From positions 1 to 64,000 of the IMG/VR virus record IMGVR_UViG_3300044591_002232: 64,000 bases of DNA; one strand, written 5' to 3'. A program made the position numbers and the translations under genes. This document shows positions 6,131-63,208 of the stretch, in pieces (position 1 is the first letter of the stretch; each line of letters begins with the position of its first letter). Below the pieces are notes generated by a model that saw only the letters and a program-made list of their open reading frames with translations, searched no databases and was not told the origin of the DNA.

Positions 6131-6279
6131 ATCAAAATAATTCGTATTATGCAAATTCTACTTCTTTAAATTTTGTTCCAAGGGTGGACGGAGGCCCAAT
6201 TAAACAAAATTGGTTAAGAAGAATTATATACTGGCCTAAACGTTTACCAAATGAACAACTCCAGGCATTAACCAGGTAG
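6103..6279 (+). pseudogene. Relic C-terminus of a LamG/ConA-like tail protein
   Basis: Start-less open frame ending ...WLRRIIYWPKRLPNEQLQALTR*, a C-terminal motif I recall from cyanophage tail proteins. Confidence 0.45.
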
Positions 6280-6356
6280 ACACTTTATAAATCGTCCACT
6301 AACTTAACATAAAGTCCAATAATCGTCTATTATTCTGCTATTCACCAAATTTTGTA

Positions 6357-7589
6357 ATGACCTCCATTATTCTTCGTCCTCATCAGGCGACGGCTCTTTC
6401 TTCTATGGGAGAAAACGATCTTGGTAAAATTATTCTTCCGACTGGTGCAGGTAAAAGTATTGTTTTTATCAAAAACACCATAGAGCAATTTAAATCTGAT
6501 ATTCCCCAGACTGTTTGCGTTGTTGCCCCAAGGATTCTCCTCGCGGTTCAACTTTCTGCTGATTACGAAAAGCACGTTAATAATGCGAAATATATGCATG
6601 TGCATTCTGGTAGTCGGCTAAGAAACTACCGCACTACCAATATAAAAGATATTCAAGAGTGGCATAATATCCATAAAGATGATCATAAACTTATTTTTAC
6701 TTCTTATAATTCCCTGAAGAAAATCACCGAGTCAAATATTAAGGTGAACACCTACAATTTTGATGAATGTCACAATTCTACTAAGAAGTCCTTCTTTCCA
6801 CACATTGAAGATGCAGTAAGGGAAGCAGACAAGAAGTACTTTTTTACTGCCACTCCTAAGAACTCTGCAATTCCAACAAAAAAACCCGGAATGAATATTG
6901 CCGAGGTTTATGGTCATGATATTTGTAAGATTCCTATGACCGAGATGGTATATGGTGGTTATGTTTTGCCTCCATTGGTGGTTAAGAAGGAAGTGAATAT
7001 TGAAGAAAGTATGGATGAAATGAATAATAATCTGATTCTAAAAACCTTGGACGAGGATACTCCCAAGAAGGTTCTTATTTCTGCGAAATCAACAAAATCA
7101 ATTATTTCTCTTCTTACTGAGACCGATTTTGTCTCTCAGATGAAGGACAGAGATTATAGTATTATGCATATAACTGCGGCTCACGGGGCATATATTGATG
7201 GTAAAGAGGTAAAGCGAGATGTGTTTTTTAGAACTTTGGATGAGTGGGGAAATGACGATTCTAAGAAGTTTGTTCTTCTTAACTACTCGATTCTTTCTGA
7301 AGGGATCAATGTCAATTCGTTGGATGCCGTGATCTTTATGAGAAATATGGATGCAATTGCCATGTTGCAAACCATTGGACGTGTGATCCGTCTTCATAAA
7401 GAAGATGCAGATCACATTGCTTCTGGTGAATTGCGGGTCGGGGATTATAAAAATTACAAGAAGCCTTATGGTATGGTAGTACTTCCTCACGGTGATTCCA
7501 AATCGAAATCAATTGCTTCCGATATTGAAAATTTAATTTATCGGTCATTTGTTGCAGGCGAAGTAGTTTCTCAGGAAATTGTAAAGTAG
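6357..7589 (+). CDS. Superfamily 2 (DEAD/DEAH-like, ResIII-type) helicase
   Basis: Q-motif LRPHQ, Walker A PTGAGKS, Walker B FDECH, motif III TAT, motif VI QTIGRVIR. Confidence 0.9.
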   Translation: MTSIILRPHQATALSSMGENDLGKIILPTGAGKSIVFIKNTIEQFKSDIPQTVCVVAPRILLAVQLSADYEKHVNNAKYMHVHSGSRLRNYRTTNIKDIQEWHNIHKDDHKLIFTSYNSLKKITESNIKVNTYNFDECHNSTKKSFFPHIEDAVREADKKYFFTATPKNSAIPTKKPGMNIAEVYGHDICKIPMTEMVYGGYVLPPLVVKKEVNIEESMDEMNNNLILKTLDEDTPKKVLISAKSTKSIISLLTETDFVSQMKDRDYSIMHITAAHGAYIDGKEVKRDVFFRTLDEWGNDDSKKFVLLNYSILSEGINVNSLDAVIFMRNMDAIAMLQTIGRVIRLHKEDADHIASGELRVGDYKNYKKPYGMVVLPHGDSKSKSIASDIENLIYRSFVAGEVVSQEIVK

Positions 7590-7684
7590 ACACTTTTTAA
7601 ACTGTCTACTTGTTAGATCAATTTCCTTCTTTATGGGGTATTCTTGGTTTGTCCTGTAAATGTTCACTACCGTAAATTCCAATT

Positions 7685-9010: not shown

Positions 9011-9531
9011 AAATCCGAAACCGGGCTATTCTTCTCTGTGGAGTGCCGACCTCAGGCAAATCTTCCTGGGTGGCACAAAACAGTGACGGTTATATGGTCA
9101 TTTCATCGGACAATATCATCGAAAATTATGCCAAAAATGTTGGCTCTACATATAATGATGTATTCGATGATTATATCGAAACTGCAATTGAATTGATGCT
9201 AGGTCAATTGCGGCATTTTGTTCACCAAGGACAAAATATTATTGTTGATCAGACGCATCTGACTCCAAAGGTACGAAAGCGGAAACTCAAAATGATTCCG
9301 GATCATTATGAGAAGATTGCTGTTTATTTTGAAATTTCTAAAGAAGAAATGTTCCAAAGAAATCATAATAAAGATCGAACCAAGACTATTCCAGATTTTG
9401 TTTTAGAATCTATGCATGGTTCTTATGTTCGGCCCACTATTGATGAGGGATTCTTGACCGTCTATAGCGGCGAAGAATTTTCTCTTGTGCCAGCCGAAAA
9501 ATTGTCACAACCGCAGGCCATTTCTGTTTAA
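9007..9531 (+). CDS. P-loop polynucleotide kinase-like protein (AAA_33)
   Basis: GVPTSGKS, ISSDNI, IIVDQTHL, R-lid; overlaps the ligase stop (TTGA). Confidence 0.8.
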   Translation: MKIRNRAILLCGVPTSGKSSWVAQNSDGYMVISSDNIIENYAKNVGSTYNDVFDDYIETAIELMLGQLRHFVHQGQNIIVDQTHLTPKVRKRKLKMIPDHYEKIAVYFEISKEEMFQRNHNKDRTKTIPDFVLESMHGSYVRPTIDEGFLTVYSGEEFSLVPAEKLSQPQAISV

Positions 9532-9578
9532 GGCGTGCTATTATTAACCTGTCCAACAAACAAAGAGGATTTTAAAAA

Positions 9579-9923
9579 ATGCAACAAACTTATGATCGGT
9601 CTTACAATTTTGATTCTAAGGACCCAAATGTGACCGTGATGGCCCGTGATTCTAGTGGTCGATGGTCACAAACCACTCTTGGCGATGTCCGAGTTTTTTC
9701 GGGATTCACTCATTTTTATTTTGTTGATGAAGTGGATGAAGACGAAGAAATGAAAGAACCTTCTTCTGTTGAACTTGCACGCCAGGGGGTCAATCGAATG
9801 ATCGATTGGATTTCACAGTGGTCAGTCCGAGCGCCTGCAGTTGATGCTAAACTCAACGAATTCCGTACAGAGATTTTTGTTGCGCTTGATGATGTAGAGG
9901 CCGAACTAGACGATACTTGGTGA
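9579..9923 (+). CDS. Hypothetical protein
   Basis: GAGG RBS; follows an operator/promoter. Confidence 0.7.
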   Translation: MQQTYDRSYNFDSKDPNVTVMARDSSGRWSQTTLGDVRVFSGFTHFYFVDEVDEDEEMKEPSSVELARQGVNRMIDWISQWSVRAPAVDAKLNEFRTEIFVALDDVEAELDDTW

Positions 9924-10004
9924 CACTTTTTTAACTGTCACACTAAAAATCAAAACACCTTAAACTCCTGATATACTATTAATAGTTATCAGGAGTTTTT
10001 TCTT

Positions 10005-11152: not shown

Positions 11153-11694
11153 GACACTTGCCAAACTGGCACAAGATCCATAAGATCCCCTAATCACATC
11201 CTATATAATACAAAAGCCCAATTGGAGGACACTTGAACCAGCAGCAAAAATTTATTTATGAGACCATCGCACAAATTGAAGACATTCTTTATGATGCGGA
11301 ATACGATCTCGGATCTGATTCAGTCATCTATAAAAAAACCAAAGATCTTCTTTCTTTCGTAGAAAATTATCAAGAAGAAAACGAATGAGATTCACAGTTG
11401 TTTACAAAATTCCAAAACATAAAAAAGAACAGAAAGCCACCTTTCTGAATATTGAAGATTCCTTCAAATGGGAAAATCATGTAAAAGAAACCCTTAAAGC
11501 CTACGATCTAAAAATTATTCCATCTTAGGAGAATTTGTTTATGCTACCCACTTTTGTAGAGTCCAAAATTCGCATTGTTGATGTTGACATTATTCTTGAA
11601 GAAGACGGGTACTATTCTGTAGTCACCTATTCTGATGGGAAATTTGATGAGTTTGGCCCTTATGATTCTTATCAAGAGGCCGAATCGGCTGTTT

Positions 11695-11702: not shown

Positions 11703-12275
11703 CAACTAACCCACAAAAAGGAGGGAACACCATGGAAACTCAGGTCATTGAGAAAAAGCAAGATTGGGAAATTCTTGAGTACCTTAATAGGGACGTAGAG
11801 GAAGAAGAAAATGAAGAGCCTTGCTATCCAGAATTTGATGACTGGGCAAGGTGACAATTGAAGAACTGTCCACTAATGGATAAAAAAGCAAAAATGCCTG
11901 TTAGGATCAAGAGGTCTAGAGAGAAGCTATCATCTTCTCTGATTGACGAACTTCTAGAGACTGATATTTTTCAGTCATCTGTCAAGGAAGAATTATCTTT
12001 AGAAGTAAAACAACTTCTAAAGGACTTTTAATTTATTATATTTGGAGTTATTTTTATGAACGAACAAGAAGCAATGGCGATTATTCGCTCTGGCAAAAAC
12101 GGCAGTCAAATTCTAGATCTTCTAGATAAGATTGTTTCTCTTTCCGATGTTGAAGAAACATCGTCAGAGGTTTCTGAAGAGATTGTGTTTGCCGACTGAC
12201 ACTTTTTAAACTGTCCACCGTATGCCCATTCTATTCGTAGGATGGGCTATTATTTTGGAAGTTCACTAAAGACTT

Positions 12276-14710: not shown

Positions 14711-15504
14711 GAGTGCGCGTAGTTTCAGATATTCACTTAGAATTTTGCCAAGACGGACATGGAATTCCTGATCTTGGATCCGGAGAAGTTTTGATTTTAG
14801 GTGGTGACATTTTATGTGCAAGACATCTTGTCAAGGATGGGCCACTAAAACGGATTTATTCCGATTTTCTTAATAAATGCATACAAAATTTTGAGGACGT
14901 AATTTACCTAAATGGAAACCATGAGCACTATTCTCTAAACTACAACAAAACATTTGAGATTCTTAAAGAACACCTTCCAAAAGAAATCCATTATCTAGAA
15001 AACGATTATGTAAAAATCAAAGATGTTATTTTCCTCGGTTGCACTCTATGGACCGACTTCTTTAATGAAGATCCAATTGAAATGTTGGATGCTTCTAGAT
15101 TTATGTCTGATTATAATGTAATCAGAATCGATTCTACTTATAGAAAACTAAGGCCAGAAGATACTCTTTATTTTCATAAAAAGTCAAGAAAATTTCTTGA
15201 AGAAAAGGTAGAAGAGTTTAAAGATTATAAGATCTGGATTTGCACTCATCATACCCCCTCTTATCAGTCGATTCATGAGAAGTACAAAAATCAGGCTCTT
15301 AATGGCGCCTTTGCTAGTAATTTAGATGACTTTATTTTGAATCATCCACAGATTAAGTATTTTAGTCATGGACATACTCATGAAAGTTTTGATTATAAAA
15401 TTGGTGAGTGTCGAGTGATATGTAATCCGCGTGGGTATTACAATGGCTATAATAGTTCCGGACTAAATCCTAATTTTGATCCAGATTTAGAAATAGTAGT
15501 GTGA
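14707..15504 (+). CDS. Metallophosphoesterase
   Basis: SDIHLE, GGDI, GNHE, THH and HGHTH motifs. Confidence 0.9.
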   Translation: MRVRVVSDIHLEFCQDGHGIPDLGSGEVLILGGDILCARHLVKDGPLKRIYSDFLNKCIQNFEDVIYLNGNHEHYSLNYNKTFEILKEHLPKEIHYLENDYVKIKDVIFLGCTLWTDFFNEDPIEMLDASRFMSDYNVIRIDSTYRKLRPEDTLYFHKKSRKFLEEKVEEFKDYKIWICTHHTPSYQSIHEKYKNQALNGAFASNLDDFILNHPQIKYFSHGHTHESFDYKIGECRVICNPRGYYNGYNSSGLNPNFDPDLEIVV

Positions 15505-15755
15505 CAATTTTCAAACTGGCACACGATTTATCTGATACCCCAAAAAACTCCTACAATAATCCCAGTTAGCAAAAAACTCATGCCGCCACATCTAACCCTC
15601 CAAACATCATCAGCATTTGAACGAATCTATGATGCTATTATGGGGAAAACATCCGATGACCTTTCGGCAATCAATCTTCATTTGCGTGAACTTCTGCGCA
15701 AAGCAAATGAAGTAGAAGAAATTCGCGCAGAACTTAACAATTGATGTAAAAAATT

Positions 15756-17318: not shown

Positions 17319-17549
17319 ATGGCCAATAACAGACTGATTCTTCTTCGATATTTGGGTAGTATTCTTGTACTAATCGGATATTTTTTTCTTTTAAATGTTG
17401 ATATTTTAACCGGGGTTTCTCTGCGAATTGTTGCAAACTGTCTCTCTCTTCCTTGGGCAATAAAATATAAAATTTGGGATTTTGTGATTCTTCTTGTATT
17501 CTTTTTGGTTTTAGAGATTGCAAAATTTATCGAGTTGACCACTTCTTGA
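17319..17549 (+). CDS. Small membrane protein
   Basis: Two to three hydrophobic segments; GAG RBS. Confidence 0.65.
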   Translation: MANNRLILLRYLGSILVLIGYFFLLNVDILTGVSLRIVANCLSLPWAIKYKIWDFVILLVFFLVLEIAKFIELTTS

Positions 17550-17592
17550 ACTGGCACACTACTATTGCTGAGTGGTGTGCTTTACCTTATGA

Positions 17593-17841
17593 TTGTCTGG
17601 TAAACAAAGGAGGTTCATCATGATGACAGAAAAAGAATTAAACCATGTAATTGATATGTCAGATTTCTGGGAAACTCACGACAAGAAAAGTCAGTCTTAT
17701 CTTGGAAAAATTCCTTCTAAAGATTTCTGGGATGAGGCGTATCAACTTTTTCTTGATTATGCAACACCAGAAGAACTGGAAACAGACACACTAAAACGAG
17801 AAACACTACAAAAAATTTCTACTGCATTGGGATTTGAATGA
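17593..17841 (+). CDS. Hypothetical protein, paralogue of 19202..19414
   Basis: YATPEELETDTLKRETL vs CATAEELEKDIIKKETL. Likely start at the ATG after GGAGG (~17619). Confidence 0.65.
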   Translation: MSGKQRRFIMMTEKELNHVIDMSDFWETHDKKSQSYLGKIPSKDFWDEAYQLFLDYATPEELETDTLKRETLQKISTALGFE

Positions 17842-19201: not shown

Positions 19202-19414
19202 ATGGACCCATTAGAAGAAAAAAGAATGTATTCTTATTTTGGTCGAATCCCATCTATTGACTTGTCTGATTATGAGTACCATATTTTTCTTACTTGTGCA
19301 ACTGCAGAAGAACTAGAGAAAGATATTATTAAAAAAGAAACATTGGTGACAATTGCTAAAATGTTGGGGAAAGATTTGACCAAGTGGGGATGGGATCGAC
19401 TGGACACTCAATAA
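19202..19414 (+). CDS. Hypothetical protein, paralogue of 17593..17841
   Basis: Shared ATxEELExDxxKxETL motif. Confidence 0.65.
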   Translation: MDPLEEKRMYSYFGRIPSIDLSDYEYHIFLTCATAEELEKDIIKKETLVTIAKMLGKDLTKWGWDRLDTQ

Positions 19415-20023
19415 TCTGGCACACTACTCTTGCTGAGTGGCGTGCTTTTGGTTTATAATACTAAAGTAAATCCTGGAGCAACAACATGACTGACGAACAA
19501 CTAATTGAAAAAGTGGCCGAAATTCTCTTTAAAGAAGAAGAACTTGATTGCCTTTACATTTATGACAATCTTGAGGTTCTTTTTATCGATGAAAGGCCCG
19601 AACTTCGTAAAAAGTATATAGAATGGCAAAAGCATGAAGAACTTCGGGCAAAGGAGCAAGAAGTAATGGAATTAGGATTTCGACTAGCAAAAGCACAAAG
19701 AGAACTTGAGGAGATTAAGGGACAGTGAACAATCCTAAACTATCTGCATTGGACCTTTCCGTAATTCTTGATACACTCACTAGAACTCTATCAATTGCGG
19801 GGTTTGAACAGGCTCTGGGTGGTTATACTAAAGATGCCAGAGAAGCCGTTCTTGAAAAAGTTTATGCAATTATGGACAATATGGAAATGGAAAATTTATA
19901 ATTATGATTTTTATAGTAATTATTTTACTGTTGATATTGGCGGGATACCGCATTGAAATAAAATTTGGAGACCTTGATGACTAAAGCTGAAATTTCAAAC
20001 CTAATTACACCAGAATTTCCACC

Positions 20024-22730: not shown

Positions 22731-23385
22731 ATTCAAAGAGAAAGATAAAACGAAGACTATCCTATGAGGTCTCTTTTTGGTATAATGGAAATAGAGAAAC
22801 AAAATATTTTCATTCGGCCAAGAAAATGAGGACCTATGTTAATGGTATTCACGAAATTACTGAAGTTGATTTCCCAACTGTGATCATTGAAAAAACTTGG
22901 TGTTATCGAAACCACCACCCAAAACATAAATGGTGGTACGAATCCACTGAACCTAATCAATTCATTTGTTATGAGAAATATTAGGACACCTGACCAACCG
23001 TCCACTCTGCCTTGTGGTGGAGTGGACTTTGACTTACAATAACGAAGTAAACCACCGAACTCCTTATGAATAGTTTGAACTATTATCTTTACAGATTGAG
23101 ATTGACTATTGATGGGTGGAAGTATTGGATGACCACTCCTTATGAAGATTTGCAAAAAATTACGAGTCCATATAATCCAGATGAACTATACTGGAGTGTC
23201 CGTAAAAGTGGACATACAATTGCCGCAAACTTTTGGTATATGGTAAATGATGGTTATTATGATATGATTGATGAATGGGAGGATTTATGAGTTGTATAAA
23301 GCAGGACACTTGACCAACCGTCCACTCTGTCTTGTGGTGGGGTGGACTTTGCCTTATAATGCCCTTGTAACCCACCGAATTCCTT

Positions 23386-27617: not shown

Positions 27618-27727
27618 AAAGTTTAACCTTTTCTTAACCTAATTTAGGACACTTTACGAACTGGAACAGGAGCACTTGAAATCCGGTGCCTTTTGTAGTA
27701 TAATGACCTTACAAACAAAGAACCAAA

Positions 27728-30983: not shown

Positions 30984-31174
30984 AAAGTTTTTATTGGAAA
31001 TTTATTGATTTTATGCATTTTTGTATTTATACCCATATTTTTCTCAAGATGTAAAAAAATTGCCCAGGCATCCGGGGTTTTAGAGACCCTCAAGGACACC
31101 TGATCAACTGGCACAATTACCCATAAACACCCCCACTAATCCCCTAAACTACAATTGCCTTAAACAAAACACCC

Positions 31175-36949: not shown

Positions 36950-37813
36950 ACACTTTGTTAAGTGTCATAATGCACACAACGCCTTGTGATTTAACGCCCT
37001 ATACTCAATAAGTATCAACGCAAAATTACTCATGAGCATGAACCTCGCCTTGACCGACAAAGATAGTGGTCTTGATATTGACCTTTGGCAAACGCCAACT
37101 TTTATCACTTGGATGTGTCTGTCCTATAATCCCGAAACAAAACACCCAGACGGGGGACATGATGGAGTTCGTCGTAGGTATGTGGAATGGGTGAAATCTC
37201 ATACAAATGGTAAATGGGATTCTCCAGAAGATTTAGAATATATGACAGAAAGAATCAATGAACATTTGTCTACACTTCAAAAAGTAAAAAATCCTGAATT
37301 CTCCTTTATTTAAAATGACCGAACAAGAACAAGACGAGCGATTTAAAGAATGCCTAAGTATCATTGACCAATGGGCCGAGAGAAATAAACCACCGACACT
37401 CTGGGAGATTATACGAAATGATTTGGGTTATAGTATTGACCTAACAGACGAAATTATAGATGCCGTGGAGAGGTGGCTACCAAAAGAACACGATACGAAC
37501 GGTTATGGTTGGAATAGTTGTATTAAAATGTTGAGGAACAAATTACAATGACACAAATTCCAAGCGACTTCCACACATATTCTCCCAAACAAAGAGAACA
37601 ATTTTGGCTTAAATCTTACGAAGAACAACAAAAAATAATCAACGATTCATATATTTCAATGATTGTTGATGAGGCCGGAAACCTGGATAAGTACAAAATT
37701 ATTGAGGTTATCCTAGACCTACAAGACAAAATAGAAGATTTAGAAAACACTTGCCAACGAACTGATTCGTACTATGATTAATCTAAATAGTCAGAACTCC
37801 TGCTTTAGGAATT

Positions 37814-41740: not shown

Positions 41741-43460
41741 GACACTCGACGAACTGGAACATATGCACTTTACGGGGGTCATTTTTGGCCTATAATAATC
41801 TTGTACCTCACAAAAATCTAATGTCAACTAAGCACTACCTTTTGATTGCTGGAGACGAATATTATCCTTCTGACTGTACCGGTGATTGGATTGAATGCTA
41901 CGAAACCAAAGAGGAAGCAATAGAAAAATGGGATGAAATATCAAATAGGTATGATTGGTATGAAATTGTTGATTTGAGGGACTGGATGAACCGATGACTA
42001 AAGACGAAATCCCCTTTATTATAGGTCTTTTTGTTGCTTTATTTTTGTCTCTTTCATTATGGCTCCATCTGATTTTTATTGTTCCAATTGGAAGAGAAAA
42101 TGACTGACAACGAAAGACTTAAATCTTCGGACTTGTTTGACTTTGATAACTGGACCTATAATATTCTTAGGGAAGATGTTAAAAACAACTTCTTTCAAGA
42201 GATATTCACATTTAAAAAGTATAGGACCAGATATTGGATAGCCGCAGTTAGAAAGGGTCCTTATGTGAAAAAGAGAGATATGAAGATTCTTTGCTATGGA
42301 ATTTATGTCCCCGGACAGTTTTGTTTTAATTCTCCAAATTGGATTTCATCGGGATATTATAAAATAAAATACTGGAACAACTCGCAAGAACCCATGGATA
42401 TTATTAGACACCTGAGAGCCAAACTAGATGTTGAGGCTCTTCCGGAAAATCTAGTCTTTTCATCTGATGATATTTAAAATGACCACCGAAAAAGAAATTC
42501 TACAACAAGCCGCCGATAAGGCCTCGGAAATTCTACAAATTCCGAACAGATACATTGATACAGTGAAGTTTCTTCAACTTTACTCACTTCTTCATGTTGT
42601 CGTTGGCGGCGATGGAGAAAATATGAGGTGGTTCCTCATGACCCATAACAAACATTTAGGGTTCTGTCCTGCCGCAAAGCTGACCGAAGAATATTATCTT
42701 GATAAAATTATTGCTTACTTGGAAACTTATGTAGACCCATGAACACAAAACAACAAAATAAAAAACTACAGAAAATGCTCCAAGACCTAAAGGACACTTT
42801 TTAAACTGGCACACTGGAGATAAAATCTGGTGTGTTTTTGGGTTATTATAATTAAGTACACAAAAAGAACTTCCACGACACCCTGTATTTCTTGGATTTG
42901 GGGATCCCGATGACTTATGATTGAAGACCTAATTGAAAATCCATCCGAAGAGAATAGGCAAAAATATCTAGATTTTGTGAATCAAAAAGAATATGATCTG
43001 ATTGTCGAGGCCCACGAGTTTCCACCAAAATCCCAGGAGTTTTTCGATAAAAAAAGCGAGGCCTTTGCTTTTAGGAGGGAATCTGCTAAGATTCTCCTGA
43101 ACCGATGGGTCGCCAAATACGGAACAGCTGAAAATTGTCCGGTTTCTTATGCAGACACCCTAAATGTACCGTTTCAACAAATTAAACCACCAAAGGAGAA
43201 TAATTAATGGATTATGATAAAGTATGGGAATCCATGAATTCCTTAGAAGGAACCATCTGTAATGCTTGTAGTGTTCGTGAGGTCATTGAGACTGCTATTA
43301 CTGCACTTGAAGAGCGAGATTATAAGAAGGCCGAAGCCCTGATGAATGCTTCTTATCAGTTTCTACAATATTTTATTGATGATTTTGATACGCATTTTAG
43401 AGTTGCCTGGGATGAAACCGTTGGTAAGTGTAAAAAAGAAGATCCTTCTCTATCTAAATT

Positions 43461-46547: not shown

Positions 46548-46566
46548 AGATAACTACTGAATTAAA

Positions 46567-47935: not shown

Positions 47936-47957
47936 GGAGCACCAGACCAGATGGAGC

Positions 47958-48155: not shown

Positions 48156-48205
48156 AATGCAAATTAACTGGTTTAACGTATTGATAGATCTTTATATTAT
48201 CTGGT

Positions 48206-48622: not shown

Positions 48623-48655
48623 GTTAAACTGTGAAAGTTCAAAGGAAAATTATTA

Positions 48656-50124: not shown

Positions 50125-50779
50125 AGGTCGAAGACTTCAGAGCCAGCATCATCGCCGCAGCCGCTCTCCTTCCACCTGAGCCCCGAGGCCCAAAATCAGG
50201 CACGACCTGCCTCTATCGCGGTGGCGAGGTTCTGTGGTGGGCCGAGCCTGATCCATGGTCCCCCATTCTGTCGGTGCCCGGTGCCTGAGGGGGAGGTAAT
50301 GGCACGACCTTAGCCGAGAATGACACTTTAAGAACTGTCCACTTCTGACAAAATTCTAGAAATCCCTAGATACAATAAGATCAAATCAATTCAGGTTTCC
50401 AATGTCCCGCACCCATCGCCAAACTTCTTACAATAAATGTGCTCTTAGGAGCCCCAAAACCCTGAACGAAAAACGTCAAATTGATTCTTTTCTCACCGAT
50501 GATGAAACTGTGGAGTTTCAGATTTCTGGTATGAATAGGATCAAAAATCGCCGGTCCATTCCCACACATCACGACGACATTGTTTGTTCTTCTTATTATG
50601 AGACTGATTATGACCACCACTGAAAAAACTGCGTATTCTAAGTCTATGTTAGCAGATGCCGAAGATTTTCTCTGGAAAAACTTTGGTATCTCTGTAGGAA
50701 CCCCCGATTATGAATGGCCTCAAGATCAAATCATCTCAGAGGCTGTAAAACGCGGCTGGAAATTTAGTTTTTATTGATT

Positions 50780-51250: not shown

Positions 51251-51512
51251 ACCTTGACACTTGAGGAACTGTCCATACTTCTGCCCGCACCACAAATGCG
51301 GGCTTTATAATATTCACAGTTAATCCAAATTCAATGGACACCTTCGGATTTTATGATGCATCAAATTGGCCCCAAGATCCTAAACAAAACTCGGCTTGGA
51401 ATGCCTATGCAAGGTCCACCACTCGGCGGTATCTTTCACCCGGAATCGCCCCTGAATGTTTTGTTGTAAGGCATCGTGGCTATAAGGGATACTACGTTTT
51501 TGGTAAATAAAC

Positions 51513-51836: not shown

Positions 51837-52404
51837 ATTTTGATTGCGTCTTTTTGGGTCAATTCCAAAACTGTCACAACCCTGTCAGCAAATGGCAACC
51901 ATGTGCCCTAAGATACAGAGCAATCGAAAAAAGCCAATGATTTCTTATTTCTCCCAAATTCTCGCCAATGATCTCACTGTTGATGATATTGAGAATCTTT
52001 CACTAGAAGATACTTATAAGGTTCTAGACGAACTACAATCTTATAAGGAAGTTTATTTCGCAAAATGGCGTAAGGTCCCAAAAGCCGAGATTGATTCAGA
52101 AAAGAGTGTTGAAATTCTTGAGGACATGAAGGCCTACAATACTCTTTTTATTGTCGCAAAGCGTCGGGCTCATTATCTCAATCATGCAAAGGTGAAGCAA
52201 CTGACAACTGCTGTTATTGTATGGAAAAAGCGTGCCTTTAAACTTGGTAAGGACCTCGGTTTTTCTAATGACCAGGTGAAGGAGATTATGGTTTACTGAA
52301 CTTAATTAAATAAGCCGTAACAGATCCAACAAGAAGAACACAAAAACCAGTAAGAATTTCTTGGGTCATTGTTTTTCCATAAATACTTATTATTTATTGA
52401 TATC

Positions 52405-52650
52405 ATGCAAGACCTAATCGCCCAAGAAATTCTTAAAATTCTCATGGAATCGGGTATCTTTAGAGAAGAAAGTACTGCTCTAGAAGTTTTGGAATCTGCC
52501 CCTAAATCCTGGATTGCTGAACTAGAAGAATCAGCTAGTTTTGTGGCCATTTCTTCACTGCAAGAGAGCCTAGAAGAGGCCGTTGCGAATAAAGATTTTG
52601 AGTCGGCAAAGAACATTAAAGAAAAAATTGCACAACTGAGCCAATCTTAA
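52405..52650 (+). CDS. UVR (UvrB/C-type coiled-coil) domain protein
   Basis: LEEAVANKDFESAKNIKEKI; CATAAATA late-like box at 52378-52385. Confidence 0.6.
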   Translation: MQDLIAQEILKILMESGIFREESTALEVLESAPKSWIAELEESASFVAISSLQESLEEAVANKDFESAKNIKEKIAQLSQS

Positions 52651-53081
52651 AAGTGTCCACTTTTTAAAAAGTCTGGGCACTTTTTGGTTATTATTGTTTT
52701 GTATCTGTGAAAGATGCTGATGATCTTCATAAAACCGCTGATAAACTTAGGGAATCTGTCGATAAACTTGTAAACAAGAAAAATGGTAAAAACCGAAAAA
52801 GAACTTAGAGAATTAATTAAAAAGAGCACGGAATTAATTAAAAAACAAAATGAAAGACTGGAACAACTAATTCAAACCCTTAAAAAGACCAATTCACAAA
52901 CTGGCACACGACCACCAGATTCTCCCTGATCGGGTGCTATTCTTTAAAGGTGTTAAGGGCTCTCGCTCAATTTTGGGATTCCGTCTCACTTAACACAAAT
53001 CGAAAAGGAATTTGTGCAGGCTTCTTTTCTTCTATTTAATCCGTTACAATGGGCCTGAGTTGAAGCAGGCTTGTTTTTCTT

Positions 53082-54561: not shown

Positions 54562-54659
54562 TTATGAAACCACTTTTTAAACCGTCCACTGCACCACCAC
54601 AAGCCGCCCATTTCACTCTATACTAAAAAAGTCCACTTAATTCATCAAACAAACAAAAA

Positions 54660-54932: not shown

Positions 54933-54934
54933 TT

Positions 54935-55171: not shown

Positions 55172-55539
55172 AAAGGATGGGCAGTTAACCTACTGTCCAC
55201 CACACCACCATAAGTCACCCATTTCAATGTACAACATCAACCCCAACCAACGCTACATTGTATATGCTCAGCGAGCAATTATCTATTTTATTCTTGCTCT
55301 TATTCTAAACAGCCTTGCAATCTACCCATTTCTTTTGGGAGCTTGTATCGGCTGGGCTTTTTGCAATACTGTTCTTTCTATTATCACTCTAATTCAAGAC
55401 TAATGTTTACTTTTGGATTGGTCAAAAAATTACCTTTATTCCCTTGTGACACTTCAAGAACCTGCACAGCCTCCTTTGTAAAACTGCACATTTAGACGTA
55501 TGATGACTGCTCCACCCAAACCCAATACAAAAACTAATA

Positions 55540-55839: not shown

Positions 55840-57618
55840 GGTTGACACTTTATAAACTGGCACAATGACCCTACCCCCAGGGTCCTTTTCTTTTAAAATT
55901 ATCCCATAATCAAACAGCAATCCACCATGAAATTTGAGCATCATTCTTCAACTAGCAATGTGGTTCGTTTGTTCATGGAGAATGACGAAATGCATGATTT
56001 TCGTAATGACATGTTTGAGGCGGTGTGCAATAGCCAAGAACCGGCTCCTGTTCTTTATGATTTTATCACTGATAATTGGATTGTTGGAAAATCTTTTGAG
56101 ATGTGTAGTTGTTCTGTCAAGTATCTGGTGGAACTCGTGAGTTACTTGGAGACTAACCAAAAATGGGATAGTTATATGTCACCAACAACCAAAGTTCTTA
56201 TTGAATTTACCAAACATGCTCAAAGGCGCATTGCCAATATTAAATTTTTTGAAGAAGTAATGGAGACGATTTAAATATTATGGACCCTAACAGAAACAAA
56301 CTAGAAACAATTCTTAAACTCCCCACTCATCGTCTCTTGGGGGTTTATCGTAAAGAAAGAGAGTATTTACACGTTTATGCAGCGGACTGGGTATGGTATT
56401 GTGATTGTTCTTCTTGTGTTGAATGGAGAGAAAATAGAAAAAAAATTAATCAAAAACTTTCTGTAATAAAAGAAGAACTTGACAAACGAGAACACTTATC
56501 AAAATGAAAATTAAAGAATTAGAAGAACTCATAAAGTCCGGTAAATTTTTTGATGCAAACAGCATAGTCCCATCAAAAGACCTTGATTCTTATGATTACA
56601 ACTTATTTCTCAAATTTGCTAGTCAAAAAGAACTAGAAGATGATTCTTTCACCACAGAAACATTCAAGAAAATTGAGGAGTACAAAATTCAAGGACTTAC
56701 TCCGACTGTTAGTTTTGTAGACGAAATTTGAATTATTATTATGAACGACCTAATTGAAGCACTCCAAATCTTTTCCAAATATGGAAATTTTGAACCCCCA
56801 TTGTTCCATTGTGAAAACAATTCTTTGACTGTTAATCCTGCAATTTCACCTTTTTATGTATCCTCTGAGGATAAGAAGAGGTTGGAAGAATTGGGATTCT
56901 TTGTTAGTACTGATTATGGATACGATATCTTTAAATCTCATCGTTTCATCGTTTCGTGATCTGTTGATTATTATGAAAACACTTTTAAATATTGGCGAAT
57001 GTATAATTTTAAGTATTGTACTTTCCATACCAACATTTTTGGCTGTTTATCTTGTATCTAAAATTCCAAAGATGCCAAAAGAACCACCACAAAAGTTTGA
57101 AGTAGTTGACACGTACAAGGGTTGCGTGGTGGTTCGCTATACTCCGGTGAATTCGGCTCATTATCACTACTTTTTGGATTGCACCAGAGACACCTAACCA
57201 ACTGGCACAAGGACCCGACCAGACCAGCCAATTCTCTTTTATACTGTCTCCAGTTCAATCAACTGATTATGCCATTACTTATTTCTAAATTTAATAATTC
57301 AAAAGGCGATTTGTCGATTAAACTAGGTCAATTTATCCCAGATGAGGAACTAAATGAATTTATGTCACCTAGAACTAATACGGTGGTTTATGCGTCTTAT
57401 CAAGAGTTGACTGTGTGTTGCGATATTCTAGGGAGACGGAACCCATCTGGAATTACTCATGGATTTTTTGGAGATAATGCAAAGGAAATTGTAGGAAATT
57501 GGAATTCTTATCAAAAAGAAGTAAATGGGGTGACACCTGATTAACTGACACAAGGACCCTACCGCCTCCCACCAACATCCATTACAATACACTCAGTTCA
57601 ACCAACTCATTTCAAATT

Positions 57619-58170: not shown

Positions 58171-58256
58171 GTAGCCACCTTTTTAACTGTCACAAGGGCT
58201 CCTCACCGGGAGTCCTTTTTGCTTTATAATACCAAAACAACTGTGAGGAAACTTTA

Positions 58257-59150
58257 ATGGGCTGCTGGAACAAAACTTGCGGGGTTTCTAACCTGCATAT
58301 TCATGCAGGAGACCCTGTTTATGTTTTTATTCTACAACAAAATACTGTAAGGTCTAATCATTGTTATTCTAATCATTTTTATACCCCAGTGATGGTCCCT
58401 TTTCAAAGTCATTATGATTATTATGGTCGTGGAAAGAATAATAGCGGTATTGGGTTAGAGGTAATTATTAAAAACCTAAAAGAAAAACTGATTGAGAAAG
58501 AAATTGGCGAAAATCAATATCACGATATTGCAGTGAAACGAGAAAGATTTGATGTACATATGCTTTTTGAGTCTATGCAAAAAGGTCGGCTTGAGATTCA
58601 GAATCCTTATGCCAGATACTCTGGAAATCCAGAAAATATTTCTGTTGATTTTGTGATGATGCGAAAGGATGTGGTAGATAAACTCATTGGAGAATATGAT
58701 ATTGAGGAGTATAGTAATGGTGGGTACATATATTACAAATTTTCTACTGTTTTAGATGGTGTGGATGAACTTATTCAGGCTATTCAAGATAAAGTTAATA
58801 AACCATATTTCTTTAGTGCTATTAAATTATCTACCAATGATAAGATCAATCACTGGGTTAGTTTTTGGACTGGATTTGAATTTAGTAGTTTTATCAATCC
58901 TCTTACTGAACTTACATCCCTAGTAAAACAAAAACGCATCGAAGATGCCAAGCAATTTGCCATAGATGCTTTGAAGGGTGCATTTATGACCAAGTTTATG
59001 GAAATGACTCGTCGTAGTTGGATTCCTCAGTGCGGCGAAGGGAGCCAGAATATAGAACTTGCTGGTCATAAAATACTTGCTAAGACTATTCTTGAAATTG
59101 CAGAAAAAGAAGAAAGGGAAATTGAACAAGAGGATTACGATGACACCTGA
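58257..59150 (+). CDS. Hypothetical protein
   Basis: 297-aa ORF directly after an operator/promoter cassette. Confidence 0.8.
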   Translation: MGCWNKTCGVSNLHIHAGDPVYVFILQQNTVRSNHCYSNHFYTPVMVPFQSHYDYYGRGKNNSGIGLEVIIKNLKEKLIEKEIGENQYHDIAVKRERFDVHMLFESMQKGRLEIQNPYARYSGNPENISVDFVMMRKDVVDKLIGEYDIEEYSNGGYIYYKFSTVLDGVDELIQAIQDKVNKPYFFSAIKLSTNDKINHWVSFWTGFEFSSFINPLTELTSLVKQKRIEDAKQFAIDALKGAFMTKFMEMTRRSWIPQCGEGSQNIELAGHKILAKTILEIAEKEEREIEQEDYDDT

Positions 59151-59753
59151 GTAACTGCCACAAGGACCCTATCACCGGGTCCTTTTTCTCTATAATAATC
59201 GAGTAACCTACTAACAACTAAAATGGCACTATCAGTATCCCAACAAATTGCATCCATTGAAAATCAATTGGCCAAATTGAAGGACCAAATTGAAGAACAA
59301 GAAAATTCCCAAAAAAAGGTTTTCTATCACATTTAAATATAACACTACGAAAGAATTCTGGGGTGATGTGGAACCGACTGAAGGACTTATTCATAGTATC
59401 CTCCAGTCTAAATTAGAAAAAATTAGTGAAGCTATGACACTTTACTGGGGATTAGAATTGGTTGAGGTTTTTGAGATTTAGACAAATGAAAATCGAACTA
59501 AAGTACATTATTTCTATCATTTTCTGCATATTATTTCTTACGTCCTGTGGGGATTATGACTTTATTTTAGAAAACCAATGTAAACTAACAGGAAAACATG
59601 AAGTAAGGACAGTAGATACTTCTTATATGATTTATGTGGGCGATGTCCCTATTTGGTTTCCAGATAGTTCAGAAGTGACCTATTATGAATATTCCTGTGT
59701 CAATGATAATGTATTCTGGTCTAGAGAACAAGTAATAGCCAAACCTACTGAAA

Positions 59754-61308: not shown

Positions 61309-61836
61309 ATGGTTATCGATCTTTTACAGCACGTTGGCGAAACTATCACCGTTCAACTTGGTGATGATAGTTTCTTAACTGGACAAGTTTCCACAAGTGA
61401 AGCTCCTGAATTTCCATATGTAATTTGTGGTTACTGGTTTCAAAGGTATGGGACCGGAGTTAGTCGAGCAAATATTGTTCGGATTCTTTCATCAGAAAAA
61501 ACCTTCAACGGAATAGCCCAAAAAGCGCCCAACATCAATTTGGATGATTTTGTGGGCCAGAAGGTTTATGTAAAACTAGCCAGAGGTACTGAACATATCA
61601 CAAACGTCAGTCCTATTTACAATTTGTCCGAGATTGGACGATATGGAAAGAACGGAACATCCGCATCCGGTAATGAAAATTGGGATATTGTAGAAATCTA
61701 CGGCCAGGATGCCTATGAAATTAACACAAAATCTACCTTTGATAATCCCAATGACTATCAAATCGAGCAGGCCAAACAATTGCTCAATCAAATGAGCGAA
61801 GAACAAATCGCCAAACTTCTGAAATCGCTTAAATGA
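61309..61836 (+). CDS. Tandem-domain protein, paralogue of 53795..54364
   Basis: GIAQKAPNINLDDFVG vs GLAQKHPHIDLNKFIG. Confidence 0.7.
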   Translation: MVIDLLQHVGETITVQLGDDSFLTGQVSTSEAPEFPYVICGYWFQRYGTGVSRANIVRILSSEKTFNGIAQKAPNINLDDFVGQKVYVKLARGTEHITNVSPIYNLSEIGRYGKNGTSASGNENWDIVEIYGQDAYEINTKSTFDNPNDYQIEQAKQLLNQMSEEQIAKLLKSLK

Positions 61837-62080
61837 ATAATCAAATTGATCCCACTTCTGGTCTTGCAATTAATTGCCGCAATTGCATTCATTGTAGCAT
61901 AAGTTGCAATGGTGCGTATTTTGATAAATGTTTGAAGGCTGGTGGGTCTTATTGTGATCAAATACACAAATATTCGGTAATTTATCGAAATATTTGTGTG
62001 AACTACAGTTCATGGACCCCAAGAAAAAAGACTATTATGGAACTACTTGGAGACAAGATTCGTAAACTTCTTTCTTGAAC

Positions 62081-62431
62081 ATGAAACTCCTCGCAATCGG
62101 GCTCAACAAACAACCAGAATACAGCGAGGCTTATGAGGTCGGAGAATGGATGGAAGGTAAAAAATTGGCCGACTATTCTCTATTTGCATACAGCGAACGG
62201 GCCGGAATTATCCAACAAATAAACACCGACCCAAGAACACCGAAAGATTATAAAAATTGGCTCAAAATGCTAATCAGACCAATTATAGTAATTTGTGATA
62301 ATGACGTTGCCGGGGAACAATTAGCCGAATTCGGTGATTATGTAGAGGTCATTCCTGAAGGTAAAGATCTGGGGGAATCTTCTGATGATTATGTTCAGTT
62401 TCTTGTAAATAACTATTGTGCCGATTTTTGA
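62081..62431 (+). CDS. Chimera: LLVVD-family N-terminus fused to a duplicated Toprim C-terminus
   Basis: PKDYKNWL...CDND.AG...FGDYVEV.P.GKDLGE..DDYVQFLVNNYCA.F matches 60004..60540. Confidence 0.7.
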   Translation: MKLLAIGLNKQPEYSEAYEVGEWMEGKKLADYSLFAYSERAGIIQQINTDPRTPKDYKNWLKMLIRPIIVICDNDVAGEQLAEFGDYVEVIPEGKDLGESSDDYVQFLVNNYCADF

Positions 62432-63208
62432 ACTGACCACTCAGGCCGCCCTCGGGTGGCCTTTATGGCCTATACTACTTTCAGTTCAACCACAATTATG
62501 ACTCTCACCGGATTTGAATACGCTAGTTTGGTGTTCTTTATTTTTCTGGCTCAAGCAAATAAGAACACTCCATCTATTCCAATTATTACTTTTATGTTTG
62601 GCGGTTTGACTTTGTTTTTTATGATTGTTGGTAAGTAATTTATGATTACAAGAATTTTTTCTGTTGGACTAGGAATTTTTCTAATTATCCTAATCCTATT
62701 TTTCAGGGGACTGCCAGTTTTAGTTCTTCTAAAAATGTTTCCCCTGATTGCCCTATTTCTTCTCGCAATTGCTTTTATAATTGCGGGAATTGCCTCAGAT
62801 TCAAATTAATTTGTCCTTTACTCTCTTAAAAATTACTATGGAACCAACCGTTACAATCACAAAAAAAGAATATGAAAGCCTGCTTGAAGACTCTAAAATT
62901 CTCCAAGCACTTTATGCTGGAGGAGTAGATAATTGGGAGTGGTATGGCGAATCCCTGGCATCCCTTGAAGATTCCTGATTTTATTTTTTAACTATCCTTT
63001 ACTCTTTTTTAAAACGTTATGTCTACTGGTAAAATTGTTATTGGCGCCGTTGGTGTTCTTGGTGTTCTTCTAATCAATGGGGCGCCTATTCTCTCACTCT
63101 CTGACAAGGATTTTGTCACTACAAAGTGACCAATTCTCAAACTGACCACTCAGGCCGCCCTCGGGTGGCCTTTTTGTTTATAATGACTAAGTACATCTAA
63201 ACAATCCC

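What the first reader, a model, noticed from the sequence alone, without database searches (positions are those of the whole stretch)
6279..63146. A 34-site palindromic operator regulon with fixed spacing to -10 boxes and no canonical -35
Seen: an 18-bp dyad GACACTT-N4-AA(C/G)TG(T/G)C (perfect arms at 36949: GACACTT-TGTT-AAGTGTC) recurs 34 times, usually overlapping the previous stop codon and with the same asymmetry on the + strand. A TATAAT-like box starts 32-34 nt after it (e.g. 11204, 19454, 23355, 27699, 34904, 41791, 58225, 63179), often with a GC hairpin where the -35 would be. Established: T4-type phages carry repeated early-promoter/stem-loop cassettes, and motifs upstream of early promoters are reported in T4-like cyanophages. 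Inference: a dimeric activator bound near -53 drives the whole early programme. It does not match NtcA (GTA-N8-TAC), so the factor may be phage-encoded, virion-packaged or an unrecognised host regulator.
Basis: partly seen in the sequence, partly recalled or inferred. Interest (0 to 1): 0.75.

Follow-up and report, generated by a model that had tools for sequence, protein, structure and literature searches.

The report
Cyanophage early-promoter palindrome cassette
A palindromic DNA site sits at a fixed distance upstream of about 32 promoter-like boxes in this lake cyanophage; the same cassette occurs in every T4-like cyanophage tested, so it is a real, apparently already reported, early-gene control element whose binding protein is still unknown.

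Summary
The dyad occurs about 32-35 times in the window and 60-69 times in the 249,820-bp genome, against 2-5 in shuffles. It is almost always on the gene strand. A TATAAT-like box starts 49-51 nt after its first base, a purine follows at the canonical +1, and an ATG usually follows 15-20 nt later. There is no -35 signal.

Pooled over seven phages, the element is a 24-bp palindrome, TGTGMCASTT-N4-AASTGKCACA, centred near -54. A hairpin lies between dyad and -10 in only a third of sites. The arms do not covary, so the dyad is not a hairpin.

The same module is enriched in all ten T4-like cyanomyoviruses tested, including Syn9 and P-TIM40. It is not enriched in the SAR11 relative HTVC008M, T4, Ma-LMM01, three cyanopodoviruses or one cyanosiphovirus. 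It was not enriched in the 65 picocyanobacterial genomes searched.

The best reading is an operator for a dimeric protein that controls host RNA polymerase at -10-only early promoters. It is most likely the early-gene element reported for Syn9 and P-TIM40 in 2016, but I could not read that paper. The binder is unidentified, and the distribution favours a phage-lineage factor over a host regulon. This is a new member of a known kind, of moderate interest.

The parts
6279..6333 (+). Module 1: dyad 6279-6296, -10-like TATTAT 6328-6333, ATG 6357 (SF2 helicase-like, 410 aa)
7589..7644 (+). Module: dyad 7589-7606, -10-like 7639-7644, ATG 7685
9489..9544 (+). Module (weaker dyad, 19 bits): dyad 9489-9506, -10-like 9539-9544, ATG 9579
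9922..9977 (+). Module: dyad 9922-9939, -10-like TATACT 9972-9977
11153..11209 (+). Module: dyad 11153-11170, TATAAT 11204-11209
11853..11907 (+). Dyad 11853-11870 with only a weak -10-like box (TAGGAT 11902); no clear ORF behind it
12198..12253 (+). Module: dyad 12198-12215, hairpin in the spacer, -10-like 12248-12253, ATG 12276
15503..15557 (+). Module: dyad 15503-15520 (close to the full 24-bp palindrome), TACAAT 15552-15557, ATG 15580
17538..17593 (+). Module: dyad 17538-17555, hairpin, TATGAT 17588-17593, ATG 17620
19403..19459 (+). Module: dyad 19403-19420, hairpin plus T-run, TATAAT 19454-19459, ATG 19486
22985..23040 (+). Module: dyad 22985-23002, hairpin, TACAAT 23035-23040, ATG 23066
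23305..23360 (+). Module: dyad 23305-23322, hairpin, TATAAT 23355-23360, ATG 23386
27648..27704 (+). Module: dyad 27648-27665, hairpin plus T-run (also a chance TTGAAA at -35), TATAAT 27699-27704, ATG 27728
31095..31150 (+). Module: dyad 31095-31112, unstructured C/A-rich spacer, weak -10-like box 31145-31150 (an alternative TACAAT starts at 31150), ATG 31175
33235..33290 (+). Module: dyad 33235-33252, hairpin plus T-run, TATGAT 33285-33290, ATG 33315
34854..34909 (+). Module: dyad 34854-34871, hairpin plus T-run, TATAAT 34904-34909, ATG 34936
36949..37005 (+). Module: perfect 18-bp palindrome 36949-36966, TATACT 37000-37005, ATG 37032
41741..41796 (+). Module: dyad 41741-41758, TATAAT 41791-41796, ATG 41821
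42793..42849 (+). Module: dyad 42793-42810, hairpin plus T-run, -10-like box 42844-42849, ATG 42917 (long leader)
50322..50376 (+). Module: dyad 50322-50339, TACAAT 50371-50376, ATG 50402
51256..51311 (+). Module: dyad 51256-51273, hairpin, TATAAT 51306-51311, ATG 51334
51858..51914 (+). Module: dyad 51858-51875, weak -10-like box 51909-51914, ATG 51937
52888..52943 (+). Module: dyad 52888-52905, TATTCT 52938-52943; no ORF behind it; tRNA-Leu(CAA) at 53082-53161 lies downstream
54569..54624 (+). Module: dyad 54569-54586, TATACT 54619-54624, ATG 54660
55448..55504 (+). Module: dyad 55448-55465, TATGAT 55499-55504, ATG 55540
55844..55899 (+). Module (best PWM score, 30.8 bits): dyad 55844-55861, hairpin plus T-run, TAAAAT 55894-55899, ATG 55927
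57189..57245 (+). Module: dyad 57189-57206, TATACT 57240-57245, leader of the CAGTTCAAC type, ATG 57269
57532..57588 (+). Module: dyad 57532-57549, TACAAT 57583-57588, ATG 57619
58174..58230 (+). Module: dyad 58174-58191, hairpin plus T-run, TATAAT 58225-58230, ATG 58257
59142..59196 (+). Module: dyad 59142-59159, hairpin plus T-run, TATAAT 59191-59196, ATG 59223
62420..62476 (+). Module: dyad 62420-62437, hairpin, TATACT 62471-62476, ATG 62498
63129..63184 (+). Module (17 bits): dyad 63129-63146, hairpin plus T-run, TATAAT 63179-63184, ATG 63209
52640..52694 (+). Weak dyad (16.5 bits) 52640-52657 with TATTAT at 52689; uncertain member

Best explanation
Each site is the upstream half of a compact early-gene promoter cassette about 100 bp long. 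The cassette starts at, or overlaps, the stop codon of the previous gene. A spacer of constant length (31-33 nt) follows; in about a third of cases it also carries the terminator hairpin of the previous gene. Then come a TATAAT-like -10 box, a purine at the canonical start position, a leader of usually 15-20 nt, and the start codon.

The operator is centred about 54 bp upstream of the predicted start, immediately upstream of where a -35 box would lie. There is no -35 box in most copies. The most likely mechanism is that a dimeric DNA-binding protein sits on the palindrome and controls the host RNA polymerase with its primary sigma factor at these -10-only promoters. It most probably recruits the polymerase, which would give the phage's small-ORF region its early expression.

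The cassette is not special to this phage. It is the common early-region module of T4-like cyanomyoviruses and very probably the 'novel regulatory element' of early genes reported for Syn9 and P-TIM40 in 2016.

Shown: the anatomy, its statistics, the distribution among phages, and the lack of enrichment in the hosts searched. Inferred: protein binding, activation, early timing in this phage, and identity with the published element. The binding protein is unknown. The distribution points to a factor specific to the cyanomyovirus lineage, delivered with the virion or made very early, rather than a host regulator with its own regulon.
For: Non-chance recurrence: 69 sites against 2-5 in shuffles; 10 exact against 0 expected.

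Rigid geometry: the -10 box starts at +49 to +51 in 48 of 60 strong sites. A purine stands 12 nt after the first -10 base in 50 of 55 sites. The distance from predicted start to ATG is 15-21 nt in 21 of the 28 window modules with a called ATG.

No -35: 2.6 against 2.53 matches of 6.

Selection rather than recent duplication: the spacer, -10 and leader (72 nt) have a median pairwise identity of 33%. Only four small clusters of similar cassettes exist, and only six downstream ORF pairs are paralogous.

Independent half-sites, so a duplex protein site and not a hairpin: positions 1 and 16 show no covariation, and positions 4 and 13 take the combinations CC 59, GG 32, GC 31 and CG 13.

The palindrome extends to 24 bp over 151 sites in 7 phages.

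The same module with the same spacing (+50 +/- 1) occurs in Syn9, P-TIM40, S-PM2, P-SSM2, S-CRM01 and S-SRM01. The dyad itself is enriched in S-SSM7, P-HM2 and S-RSM4.

More than 120 IMG/VR stretches carry the exact 24-bp form.

In arrays on IMG/VR contigs, a TTGACA box lies 7 nt after the palindrome and 17-18 nt before the -10-like box. This fixes the centre near -54.5.

The genome is a Kyanoviridae-type myovirus syntenic with S-SRM01 and P-SSM2, and the sites fill its 6-85 kb small-ORF region.

Cyanomyoviruses lack alt, modA, modB, motA and asiA, so a different early mechanism is expected (PMC2984593).
Against: There are no transcript 5' ends for this phage; no RNA run was listed.

The 2016 paper (PMC5029184) is not held. 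Identity with the published element therefore rests on my memory of its abstract and on finding the module in the same two phages.

A centre near -54 is not one of the classical CRP class I or class II positions.

No DNA-binding candidate was confirmed:
- DUF7717, the only unknown small protein that co-occurs perfectly with the dyad, has no DNA-binding fold match.
- The 51-aa HTH-like protein is missing from P-TIM40.
- The 84-aa 'transcriptional regulator' has no family support beyond a PHROG label.
- The complex prediction was not folded.

An activator needed for the very first transcripts must pre-exist in the cell or be injected, and neither was shown. Many cyanobacterial promoters lack a recognisable -35 (my own knowledge), so the -10 box alone might give basal activity.
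Confidence: 0.6

Rival explanations
1. A host transcription factor conserved in picocyanobacteria binds the palindrome, and the phage borrows it to fire its early promoters immediately after injection.
For: The dyad is found only in myoviruses of picocyanobacteria. It is absent from the related SAR11 phage HTVC008M (0 loci) and from T4, so it tracks the host group. A pre-existing host protein would explain immediate-early timing without any packaged factor. From my memory of the 2016 abstract, Syn9 runs the same programme in three different hosts.
Against: There are no exact degenerate matches in five host-type genomes, including WH7803, a host of S-PM2 by its record. With one mismatch, 61 Cyanobiaceae genomes show counts at or below the reversed-pattern control. 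Five of the six host hits inspected lie inside long open frames, and none shows the phage cassette. No dyad plus spacing plus TAnnnT was found in WH7803 or a freshwater Cyanobium. Cyanopodoviruses P-SSP7, Syn5 and P60 and the siphovirus P-SS2, which infect the same host group, are not enriched.
Confidence: 0.2
2. The palindrome is an operator for a phage-made early protein that shuts the early promoters off, or insulates neighbouring cassettes by blocking read-through. It would replace the T4 AsiA/MotA/Mod shut-off that cyanomyoviruses lack. The -10 box alone would give the initial activity.
For: The hosts searched lack the site, and the lineage-specific distribution fits a phage-encoded binder. 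DUF7717 is a conserved early-region gene present in all seven cyanomyoviruses compared and has no hit in HTVC008M. It often sits directly behind a dyad promoter. Two thirds of cassettes have no terminator hairpin, so another insulator would be useful. Cyanobacterial promoters commonly work without a -35 (my own knowledge).
Against: A site centred at -54 does not overlap the core promoter, which is unusual for a simple repressor. The strict helical phasing to the -10 fits contact with the polymerase better than a roadblock. The DUF7717 model shows no DNA-binding fold match.
Confidence: 0.15
3. The repeats are mainly recombination substrates: PeSL-like mobile promoter-terminator cassettes that shuffle ORFans. 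The dyad would be conserved by concerted evolution rather than by protein binding.
For: The cassettes flank small ORFans in a hyperplastic region, as PeSLs do (PMC2839356, PMC4122927). Each lineage has its own preferred base pair at positions 4 and 13. A few cassette subfamilies are nearly identical over about 70 nt.
Against: Outside the dyad and the -10 box the cassettes are about 33% identical, which is random. The shared homology is therefore only 18-24 bp. The palindrome and its spacing are conserved across genera whose flanking sequences are unrelated, which needs direct selection on the site.
Confidence: 0.04
4. The dyad acts as a hairpin in RNA or single-stranded DNA, as a terminator, a processing site or a cruciform.
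For: It lies at the 3' end of the upstream gene and could draw a 7-bp stem with a 4-nt loop.
Against: Pairing is not maintained. Positions 4 and 13 are non-complementary in most copies (CC or GG in 91 of 151 sites). Positions 1 and 16 pair no more often than independence predicts. Separate GC hairpins with T-runs supply termination where present. No Rfam family matches.
Confidence: 0.01

Closest known systems
Early-gene regulatory element of T4-like cyanophages (Doron et al. 2016, ISME J 10:1437; Syn9 and P-TIM40)
   Same: The module I define here stands in the small-ORF regions of both Syn9 (43-53 kb) and P-TIM40 (45-55 kb), with the same dyad, the same +50 spacing to a -10 box and a short leader. 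It is widespread in cyanomyovirus isolates and in IMG/VR contigs. This matches the abstract's statement, as I remember it, that the element is abundant and conserved.
   Different: I could not read the paper, so the published logo and start sites were not compared. This phage is an uncultured freshwater relative with many more copies (about 60) and a C...C preference at the two S positions, where Syn9 prefers G...G.
PeSL cassettes (promoter-early stem-loops) of T4-type phages RB49/phi1, nt-1/KVP40, PST/T4 (PMC2839356, PMC4122927)
   Same: [quoted passage not shown] Both combine an early promoter with an optional terminator stem-loop, are repeated dozens of times, and are concentrated in hyperplastic ORFan regions.
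   Different: PeSLs have a near-consensus sigma-70 -35 and -10 with an A/T-rich upstream region. Here the -35 is absent and a GC-containing palindrome takes the upstream place. The stem-loop is present in only a third of copies.
Activator-dependent promoters of the CRP/FNR/NtcA type
   Same: All have a palindromic site for a dimer at a fixed helical position upstream of a -10 box with a weak or absent -35. The outer bases of the 24-mer read TGTGA...TCACA.
   Different: The half-sites are 14 bp apart, not 6 (CRP) or 8 (NtcA, GTA-N8-TAC). The centre is near -54, not -41.5 or -61.5. No matching regulon was found in the host genomes searched.
T4 early promoters with UP elements and injected Alt
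   Same: Both are very early phage promoters whose strength depends on a sequence at about -40 to -65, in T4 combined with a virion-delivered protein.
   Different: The T4 upstream element is A/T-rich and is read by the alpha subunit. Alt is an ADP-ribosyltransferase, not a site-specific binder. Cyanomyoviruses lack alt, modA and modB (PMC2984593). The dyad is not enriched in T4.

Membership tests
T4-like cyanophage early-gene element (Doron et al. 2016) | Present upstream of genes in the early/small-ORF regions of Syn9 and P-TIM40 | tested here: met
   The same dyad, ACA flank, +50 -10 box and ATG module occurs in Syn9 at 43116, 44777, 47207, 48561, 49081, 51003 and 52999, and in P-TIM40 at 45032-55027. 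The temporal class of those genes comes from my memory of the paper and was not checked.
T4-like cyanophage early-gene element (Doron et al. 2016) | Abundant and conserved among T4-like cyanophages and in metagenomes | tested here: met
   Enriched in 10 of 10 cyanomyoviruses tested, with 9-58 loci against 0-7 in null or reversed-pattern controls. More than 120 IMG/VR stretches carry the exact 24-mer.
T4-like cyanophage early-gene element (Doron et al. 2016) | Sequence identical to the published logo, and mapped start sites at a fixed distance | not testable with these tools
   The paper is not held and no RNA run was listed.
PeSL (promoter-early stem-loop) cassette | Sigma-70-type -35 and -10 boxes with 17-nt spacing | tested here: not met
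   The -10 box is present. The -35 match is 2.6 of 6 against 2.53 at random; only 3 of 55 sites reach 5 of 6 or better.
PeSL (promoter-early stem-loop) cassette | Stable stem-loop within the cassette | tested here: inconclusive
   18 of 55 sites have dG <= -6 kcal/mol, and 8 of these also have a T-run of 4 or more. The feature is optional here.
PeSL (promoter-early stem-loop) cassette | Intergenic, repeated, concentrated in hyperplastic ORFan regions | tested here: met
   The sites fill 6-85 kb, a region of small ORFs with few homologues.
NtcA binding site | GTA-N8-TAC centred at -41.5 | tested here: not met
   The consensus is TGTGMCASTT-N4-AASTGKCACA, centred near -54.
CRP/FNR-type operator | TGTGA-N6-TCACA or TTGAT-N4-ATCAA at -41.5 or -61.5 | tested here: not met
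   The outer pentamers resemble TGTGA and TCACA but are 14 bp apart, and the centre is near -54.
Intrinsic terminator or RNA hairpin | Base pairing maintained between the arms (covariation), followed by a U-run | tested here: not met
   Positions 4 and 13 are mostly non-complementary, and positions 1 and 16 are independent.
Host regulon operator (any picocyanobacterial transcription factor) | Sites in host genomes above chance, in promoter positions | tested here: not met
   0 exact matches in 5 genomes. No excess over control in 61 genomes. Five of six inspected hits are inside long open frames and none shows the cassette. No dyad plus -10 arrangement in two genomes.

The most novel reading that the evidence does not exclude
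The palindrome is read by a site-specific dimeric protein that is encoded by cyanomyoviruses, has not been recognised so far, and is delivered with the virion or is already active before any other phage gene. It would turn -10-only cassettes into the strongest promoters in the cell. This would be a new way for a T4-like phage to seize host polymerase without Alt, Mod, AsiA or MotA. The 58-bp head-to-tail arrays of the site seen in some uncultured relatives would then be part of the same system.
Probability: 0.25. Interest if true: 0.75.

Novelty: new member of a known kind. Interest (0 to 1): 0.4.

Why it matters
T4-like cyanophages kill a large share of the ocean's and many lakes' picocyanobacteria. 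How they start their programme without the T4 takeover genes is still unsolved.

This genome carries about 60 copies of the early cassette. That gives an unusually clean definition of the element: a 24-bp palindrome, a fixed 31-33 nt spacer, a -10 box and no -35.

The survey here narrows the search for the binder. The site is found in all cyanomyoviruses tested. It was not enriched in the host genomes searched, in other phage families of the same hosts, or in the SAR11 relative. That makes a pull-down with the 24-mer a direct and cheap experiment.

The cassette can also serve as a marker for early genes when annotating uncultured cyanomyovirus genomes.

Tried and rejected
1. Reading the key paper (Doron et al. 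2016) by DOI and by PMC id: not held. Mann et al. 2005 is also not held. Eight full-text searches found no open paper that prints the motif.

2. RNA evidence: DNA runs from lake-water metagenomes hold the region. No RNA run was listed.

3. Host regulon: five named host-type genomes, 61 Cyanobiaceae genomes, inspection of six hits, and a dyad plus -10 pattern all gave nothing above control.

4. Candidate binders by phyletic pattern (present in at least 5 of 6 cyanomyoviruses, no tblastn hit in HTVC008M), followed by Pfam, PHROG and NCBIfam scans:
- No HTH family was found.
- DUF7717 was modelled (pLDDT 85.6). It has no PDB match, and only uncharacterised proteins match in AlphaFold DB.
- The 84-aa homologue of Syn9 gp230, labelled 'transcriptional regulator', has no Pfam, NCBIfam or PDB support. 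It looks like a cysteine-less FmdB-type N-terminus and has a weak HTVC008M hit.
- The 51-aa HTH-like protein is absent from P-TIM40.

5. Protein-DNA complex prediction for the 51-aa protein with a natural 30-mer was not folded by the tool. It is no evidence either way.

I rebuilt the alignment from database hits instead.

7. Hairpin reading of the dyad: rejected by the lack of covariation.

8. Recent duplication as the cause of the repeats: rejected by 33% identity outside the conserved boxes.

9. Rfam scan of the window and the next 20 kb: only the tRNA matched.

Full report
**What is there.** With up to two mismatches there are 49 matches on both strands, against 1.16 expected.

The window is the first 64 kb of a single 249,820-bp contig. 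Runs from lake-water metagenomes hold the same sequence. A weight matrix built from the sites and iterated finds 69 sites of at least 12 bits in the contig, against 2-5 in Markov shuffles. Thirty-nine are in the window.

The sites are packed between 6 and 85 kb and scattered elsewhere. The aligned strong sites lie on the strand that carries a -10-like box at the expected distance and, in most cases, a downstream ORF.

**Anatomy.**
- Aligned on the dyad, a TATAAT-like hexamer starts at +49 to +51 from the first dyad base in 48 of 60 strong sites.
- Aligned on that hexamer, T1, A2 and T6 are nearly invariant. A purine stands 12 nt after its first base in 50 of 55 sites, which is the canonical +1.
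- From that predicted start to the ATG is 15-21 nt in 21 of the 28 window modules with a called ATG.
- The best match to TTGACA at 16-18 nt upstream of the hexamer averages 2.6 of 6, against 2.53 at random genome positions. The claim of no canonical -35 is therefore correct.
- A stable hairpin between dyad and -10 is present in 18 of 55 sites, 8 of them with a T-run of 4 or more. The other spacers are C/A-rich and unstructured, yet their length is the same. Some of these hairpins are also picked up by the terminator scan.
- For most window sites with an upstream ATG-ORF, that ORF ends within, or a few nt from, the dyad.

**The element is larger and more symmetrical than described.** I pooled 151 sites from this genome and six reference phages. 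The conserved block is TGT-GMCASTT-N4-AASTGKC-ACA, a 24-bp palindrome in which every conserved column has its mirror. In this genome the left TGT is weaker because it overlaps stop codons.

The two arms behave independently. Positions 1 and 16 pair no more often than chance. Positions 4 and 13 take all four combinations (CC 59, GG 32, GC 31, CG 13), with a different favourite in each lineage: C...C here, G...G in Syn9, P-TIM40 and P-SSM2, and G...C in S-CRM01.

This rules out a hairpin function. It also shows that the 'same asymmetry on the + strand' reflects cassette ancestry within a genome, not functional polarity. With the -10 box at +50 and the start at +62, the palindrome centre lies near -54.

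**Selection, not copying.** Outside the dyad and the -10 box the cassettes are unrelated. The median pairwise identity over 72 nt of spacer, -10 and leader is 33%. There are only four small clusters of similar cassettes and six paralogous pairs among downstream ORFs.

**Relatives.** The genome is a T4-like cyanomyovirus. Of its ORFs, 140 have tblastn hits in S-SRM01 and 75-102 in each of five other cyanomyoviruses, with conserved order of the structural and replication genes from 93 kb onward. It encodes an hli-type protein.

The Syn9 small-ORF region (43-53 kb) carries the same module on the gene strand. Examples are GACACCTGCCTAAGTGTC-cac at 47207 and GACAGTCAAAGAGGTGGC-aca at 48561, each followed 32 nt later by a -10-like box and then an ATG.

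A self-complementary degenerate pattern with up to one mismatch gives these counts:

| Genome | Loci | Markov null |
|---|---|---|
| This genome | 58 | 1 |
| S-SRM01 | 27 | 1-3 |
| S-CRM01 | 23 | 1-3 |
| S-PM2 | 18 | 1-3 |
| P-TIM40 | 13 | 2-4 |
| P-SSM2 | 12 | 1-7 |
| Syn9 | 9 | 0-2 |

Nearly all of these have the ACA flank and a -10 box at +50 +/- 1.

S-SSM7 (16), S-RSM4 (15) and P-HM2 (9) are also enriched, against reversed-pattern controls of 1-2. The following are at control level:
- Pelagibacter phage HTVC008M (0)
- T4 (2)
- Ma-LMM01 (1)
- the podoviruses P-SSP7, Syn5 and P60
- the siphovirus P-SS2

By my own rough estimate only a few would be expected by chance.

**Hosts.** The degenerate dyad has no exact match in Synechococcus WH7803, a freshwater Cyanobium and three further Synechococcus genomes. 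With one mismatch, 61 Cyanobiaceae genomes show counts at or below the reversed-pattern control. Six hits were inspected: five lie inside long open frames and none shows the phage cassette. No dyad plus spacer plus TAnnnT arrangement exists in WH7803 or the Cyanobium. A host regulon using this operator is therefore unlikely, though one or two weak host sites cannot be excluded.

**Relation to what is known.** PeSLs of T4-type coliphages and vibriophages are the closest architectural analogue. [quoted passage not shown] Here the -35 and the A/T-rich upstream region are replaced by the palindrome, and the stem-loop is optional.

Cyanomyoviruses lack alt, modA, modB, motA and asiA, and their early mechanism was called unclear in 2010 (PMC2984593). 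From memory, the abstract of Doron et al. 2016 says three things:
- A novel regulatory element controls early genes of Syn9.
- Host-like promoters drive the middle genes.
- The same holds for P-TIM40, and the elements are abundant in T4-like cyanophages.

I could not open that paper. The module found here in exactly those two phages and across the family makes identity very likely, but it is not verified.

**Who binds it.** The site is absent from the hosts searched, from unrelated phages of the same hosts and from the SAR11 relative. This fits a factor specific to cyanomyoviruses best. For immediate-early use it would have to be packaged.

I listed ORFs with homologues in at least five of six cyanomyoviruses and no hit in HTVC008M, and scanned them against family libraries.
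- **DUF7717** (85522-85965) is the only unknown small protein with perfect co-occurrence, and it often lies right behind a dyad promoter. Its model (pLDDT 85.6) is a helical hairpin plus a five-stranded sheet with no match to solved structures.
- **The 84-aa homologue of Syn9 gp230** is labelled 'transcriptional regulator' in the records. It has no family or structure support and resembles a cysteine-less FmdB-type N-terminus.
- **The 51-aa HTH-like protein** (236075-236230) is missing from P-TIM40.
- The complex prediction was not folded.

No candidate is supported.

**Verdict.** A promoter-coupled operator for a dimer near -54 is the best reading (confidence about 0.6), activation is the more likely sign, and the factor is unknown. 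The element is a new, copy-rich instance of a class already reported for T4-like cyanophages. Its interest lies in the clean definition it gives and in the still open identity of the binder.

Noticed in passing
L263:1-420 and L220 (IMGVR_UViG_3300008113_001711); L225:1640-1960 (IMGVR_UViG_3300031784_003461). L232 has similarly spaced matches but was not read.: In some uncultured viral contigs the 24-bp palindrome forms head-to-tail arrays of 5-8 units of about 58 bp. Each unit is palindrome, 7 nt, TTGACA, 17-18 nt, then TAGCTG or TAGATG, with no ORF between units. The purpose is unknown; a promoter array, a factor sponge or a short-transcript array are possibilities.
   Followed up: partly
window 26449-27582 (-) and 29677-30876 (-): Two TnpB-type genes (HTH_OrfB_IS605, OrfB_IS605 and Cas12f1-like TNB domains) lie on the minus strand inside the early region. 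Each is followed on the + strand by a dyad promoter, at 27648 and 31095.
   Followed up: partly
window 1-733 and 1394-2362: The first 4 kb have 49% G+C, against about 35% elsewhere. They hold a collagen-like Gly-X-Y repeat array (periods 18, 27 and 81) and a 141-bp repeat of 6.9 copies inside the ORF at 1331-2371. These are probably tail-fibre-type late genes that continue from the end of the contig. The dyad region starts only at 6279.
   Followed up: partly
window 38843-39592 (+): An ORF inside the early region has a T4-type terminase large-subunit N-terminal domain (Terminase_6N, E 2e-8). It hits the terminase loci of all six reference phages, although the full-length terminase gene is at 121582-123687. 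It appears to be a partial second copy.
   Followed up: no
window 45167-47406 (-): A minus-strand block without dyads holds a papain-family cysteine protease (45167-45964), a short collagen-like ORF (45974-46507) and an ORF of 279 aa with no family match.
   Followed up: no
window 52888-53161: The dyad module at 52888 has no ORF behind it. The only tRNA of the window, Leu(CAA) at 53082-53161, lies about 130 nt downstream of its predicted start. The tRNA may be driven by an early cassette.
   Followed up: no
G000:C1 81533, 82011, 82383, 84272, 84752 (minus strand; L153): Five nearly identical minus-strand dyads (CCTTGT-GMCACTTAAACAACTGGC-ACAC) are followed by no ORF or only ORFs of fewer than 45 codons. 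The sequences after 82383 and 84272 are alike for about 150 nt. They may be small RNA genes under the same promoter type. Rfam finds nothing there.
   Followed up: partly
G000:C1 85522-85965 (L153:5522-5962): DUF7717 is a very abundant viral family, with 6503 clusters at E <= 1e-5. It is present in the early region of every cyanomyovirus compared and has no hit in HTVC008M. Its predicted fold has no solved relative.
   Followed up: yes
window 34904-34935, 57240-57268; also S-PM2 and S-SRM01 modules: Two leader types recur across phages: TATAAT-ACTCTCATAC... and TATACT-GTCTCCAGTTCAAC.... The initially transcribed region is therefore also conserved. In P-TIM40 the spacer carries an extra conserved box, CACTACCG, at about +30 to +37.
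   Followed up: no
whole contig G000:C1: No psbA was found with four conserved D1 peptide patterns that detect it in Syn9, S-PM2 and S-SRM01. An hli-type gene is present at 199674-199883. Only two tRNA genes were found in 250 kb.
   Followed up: partly
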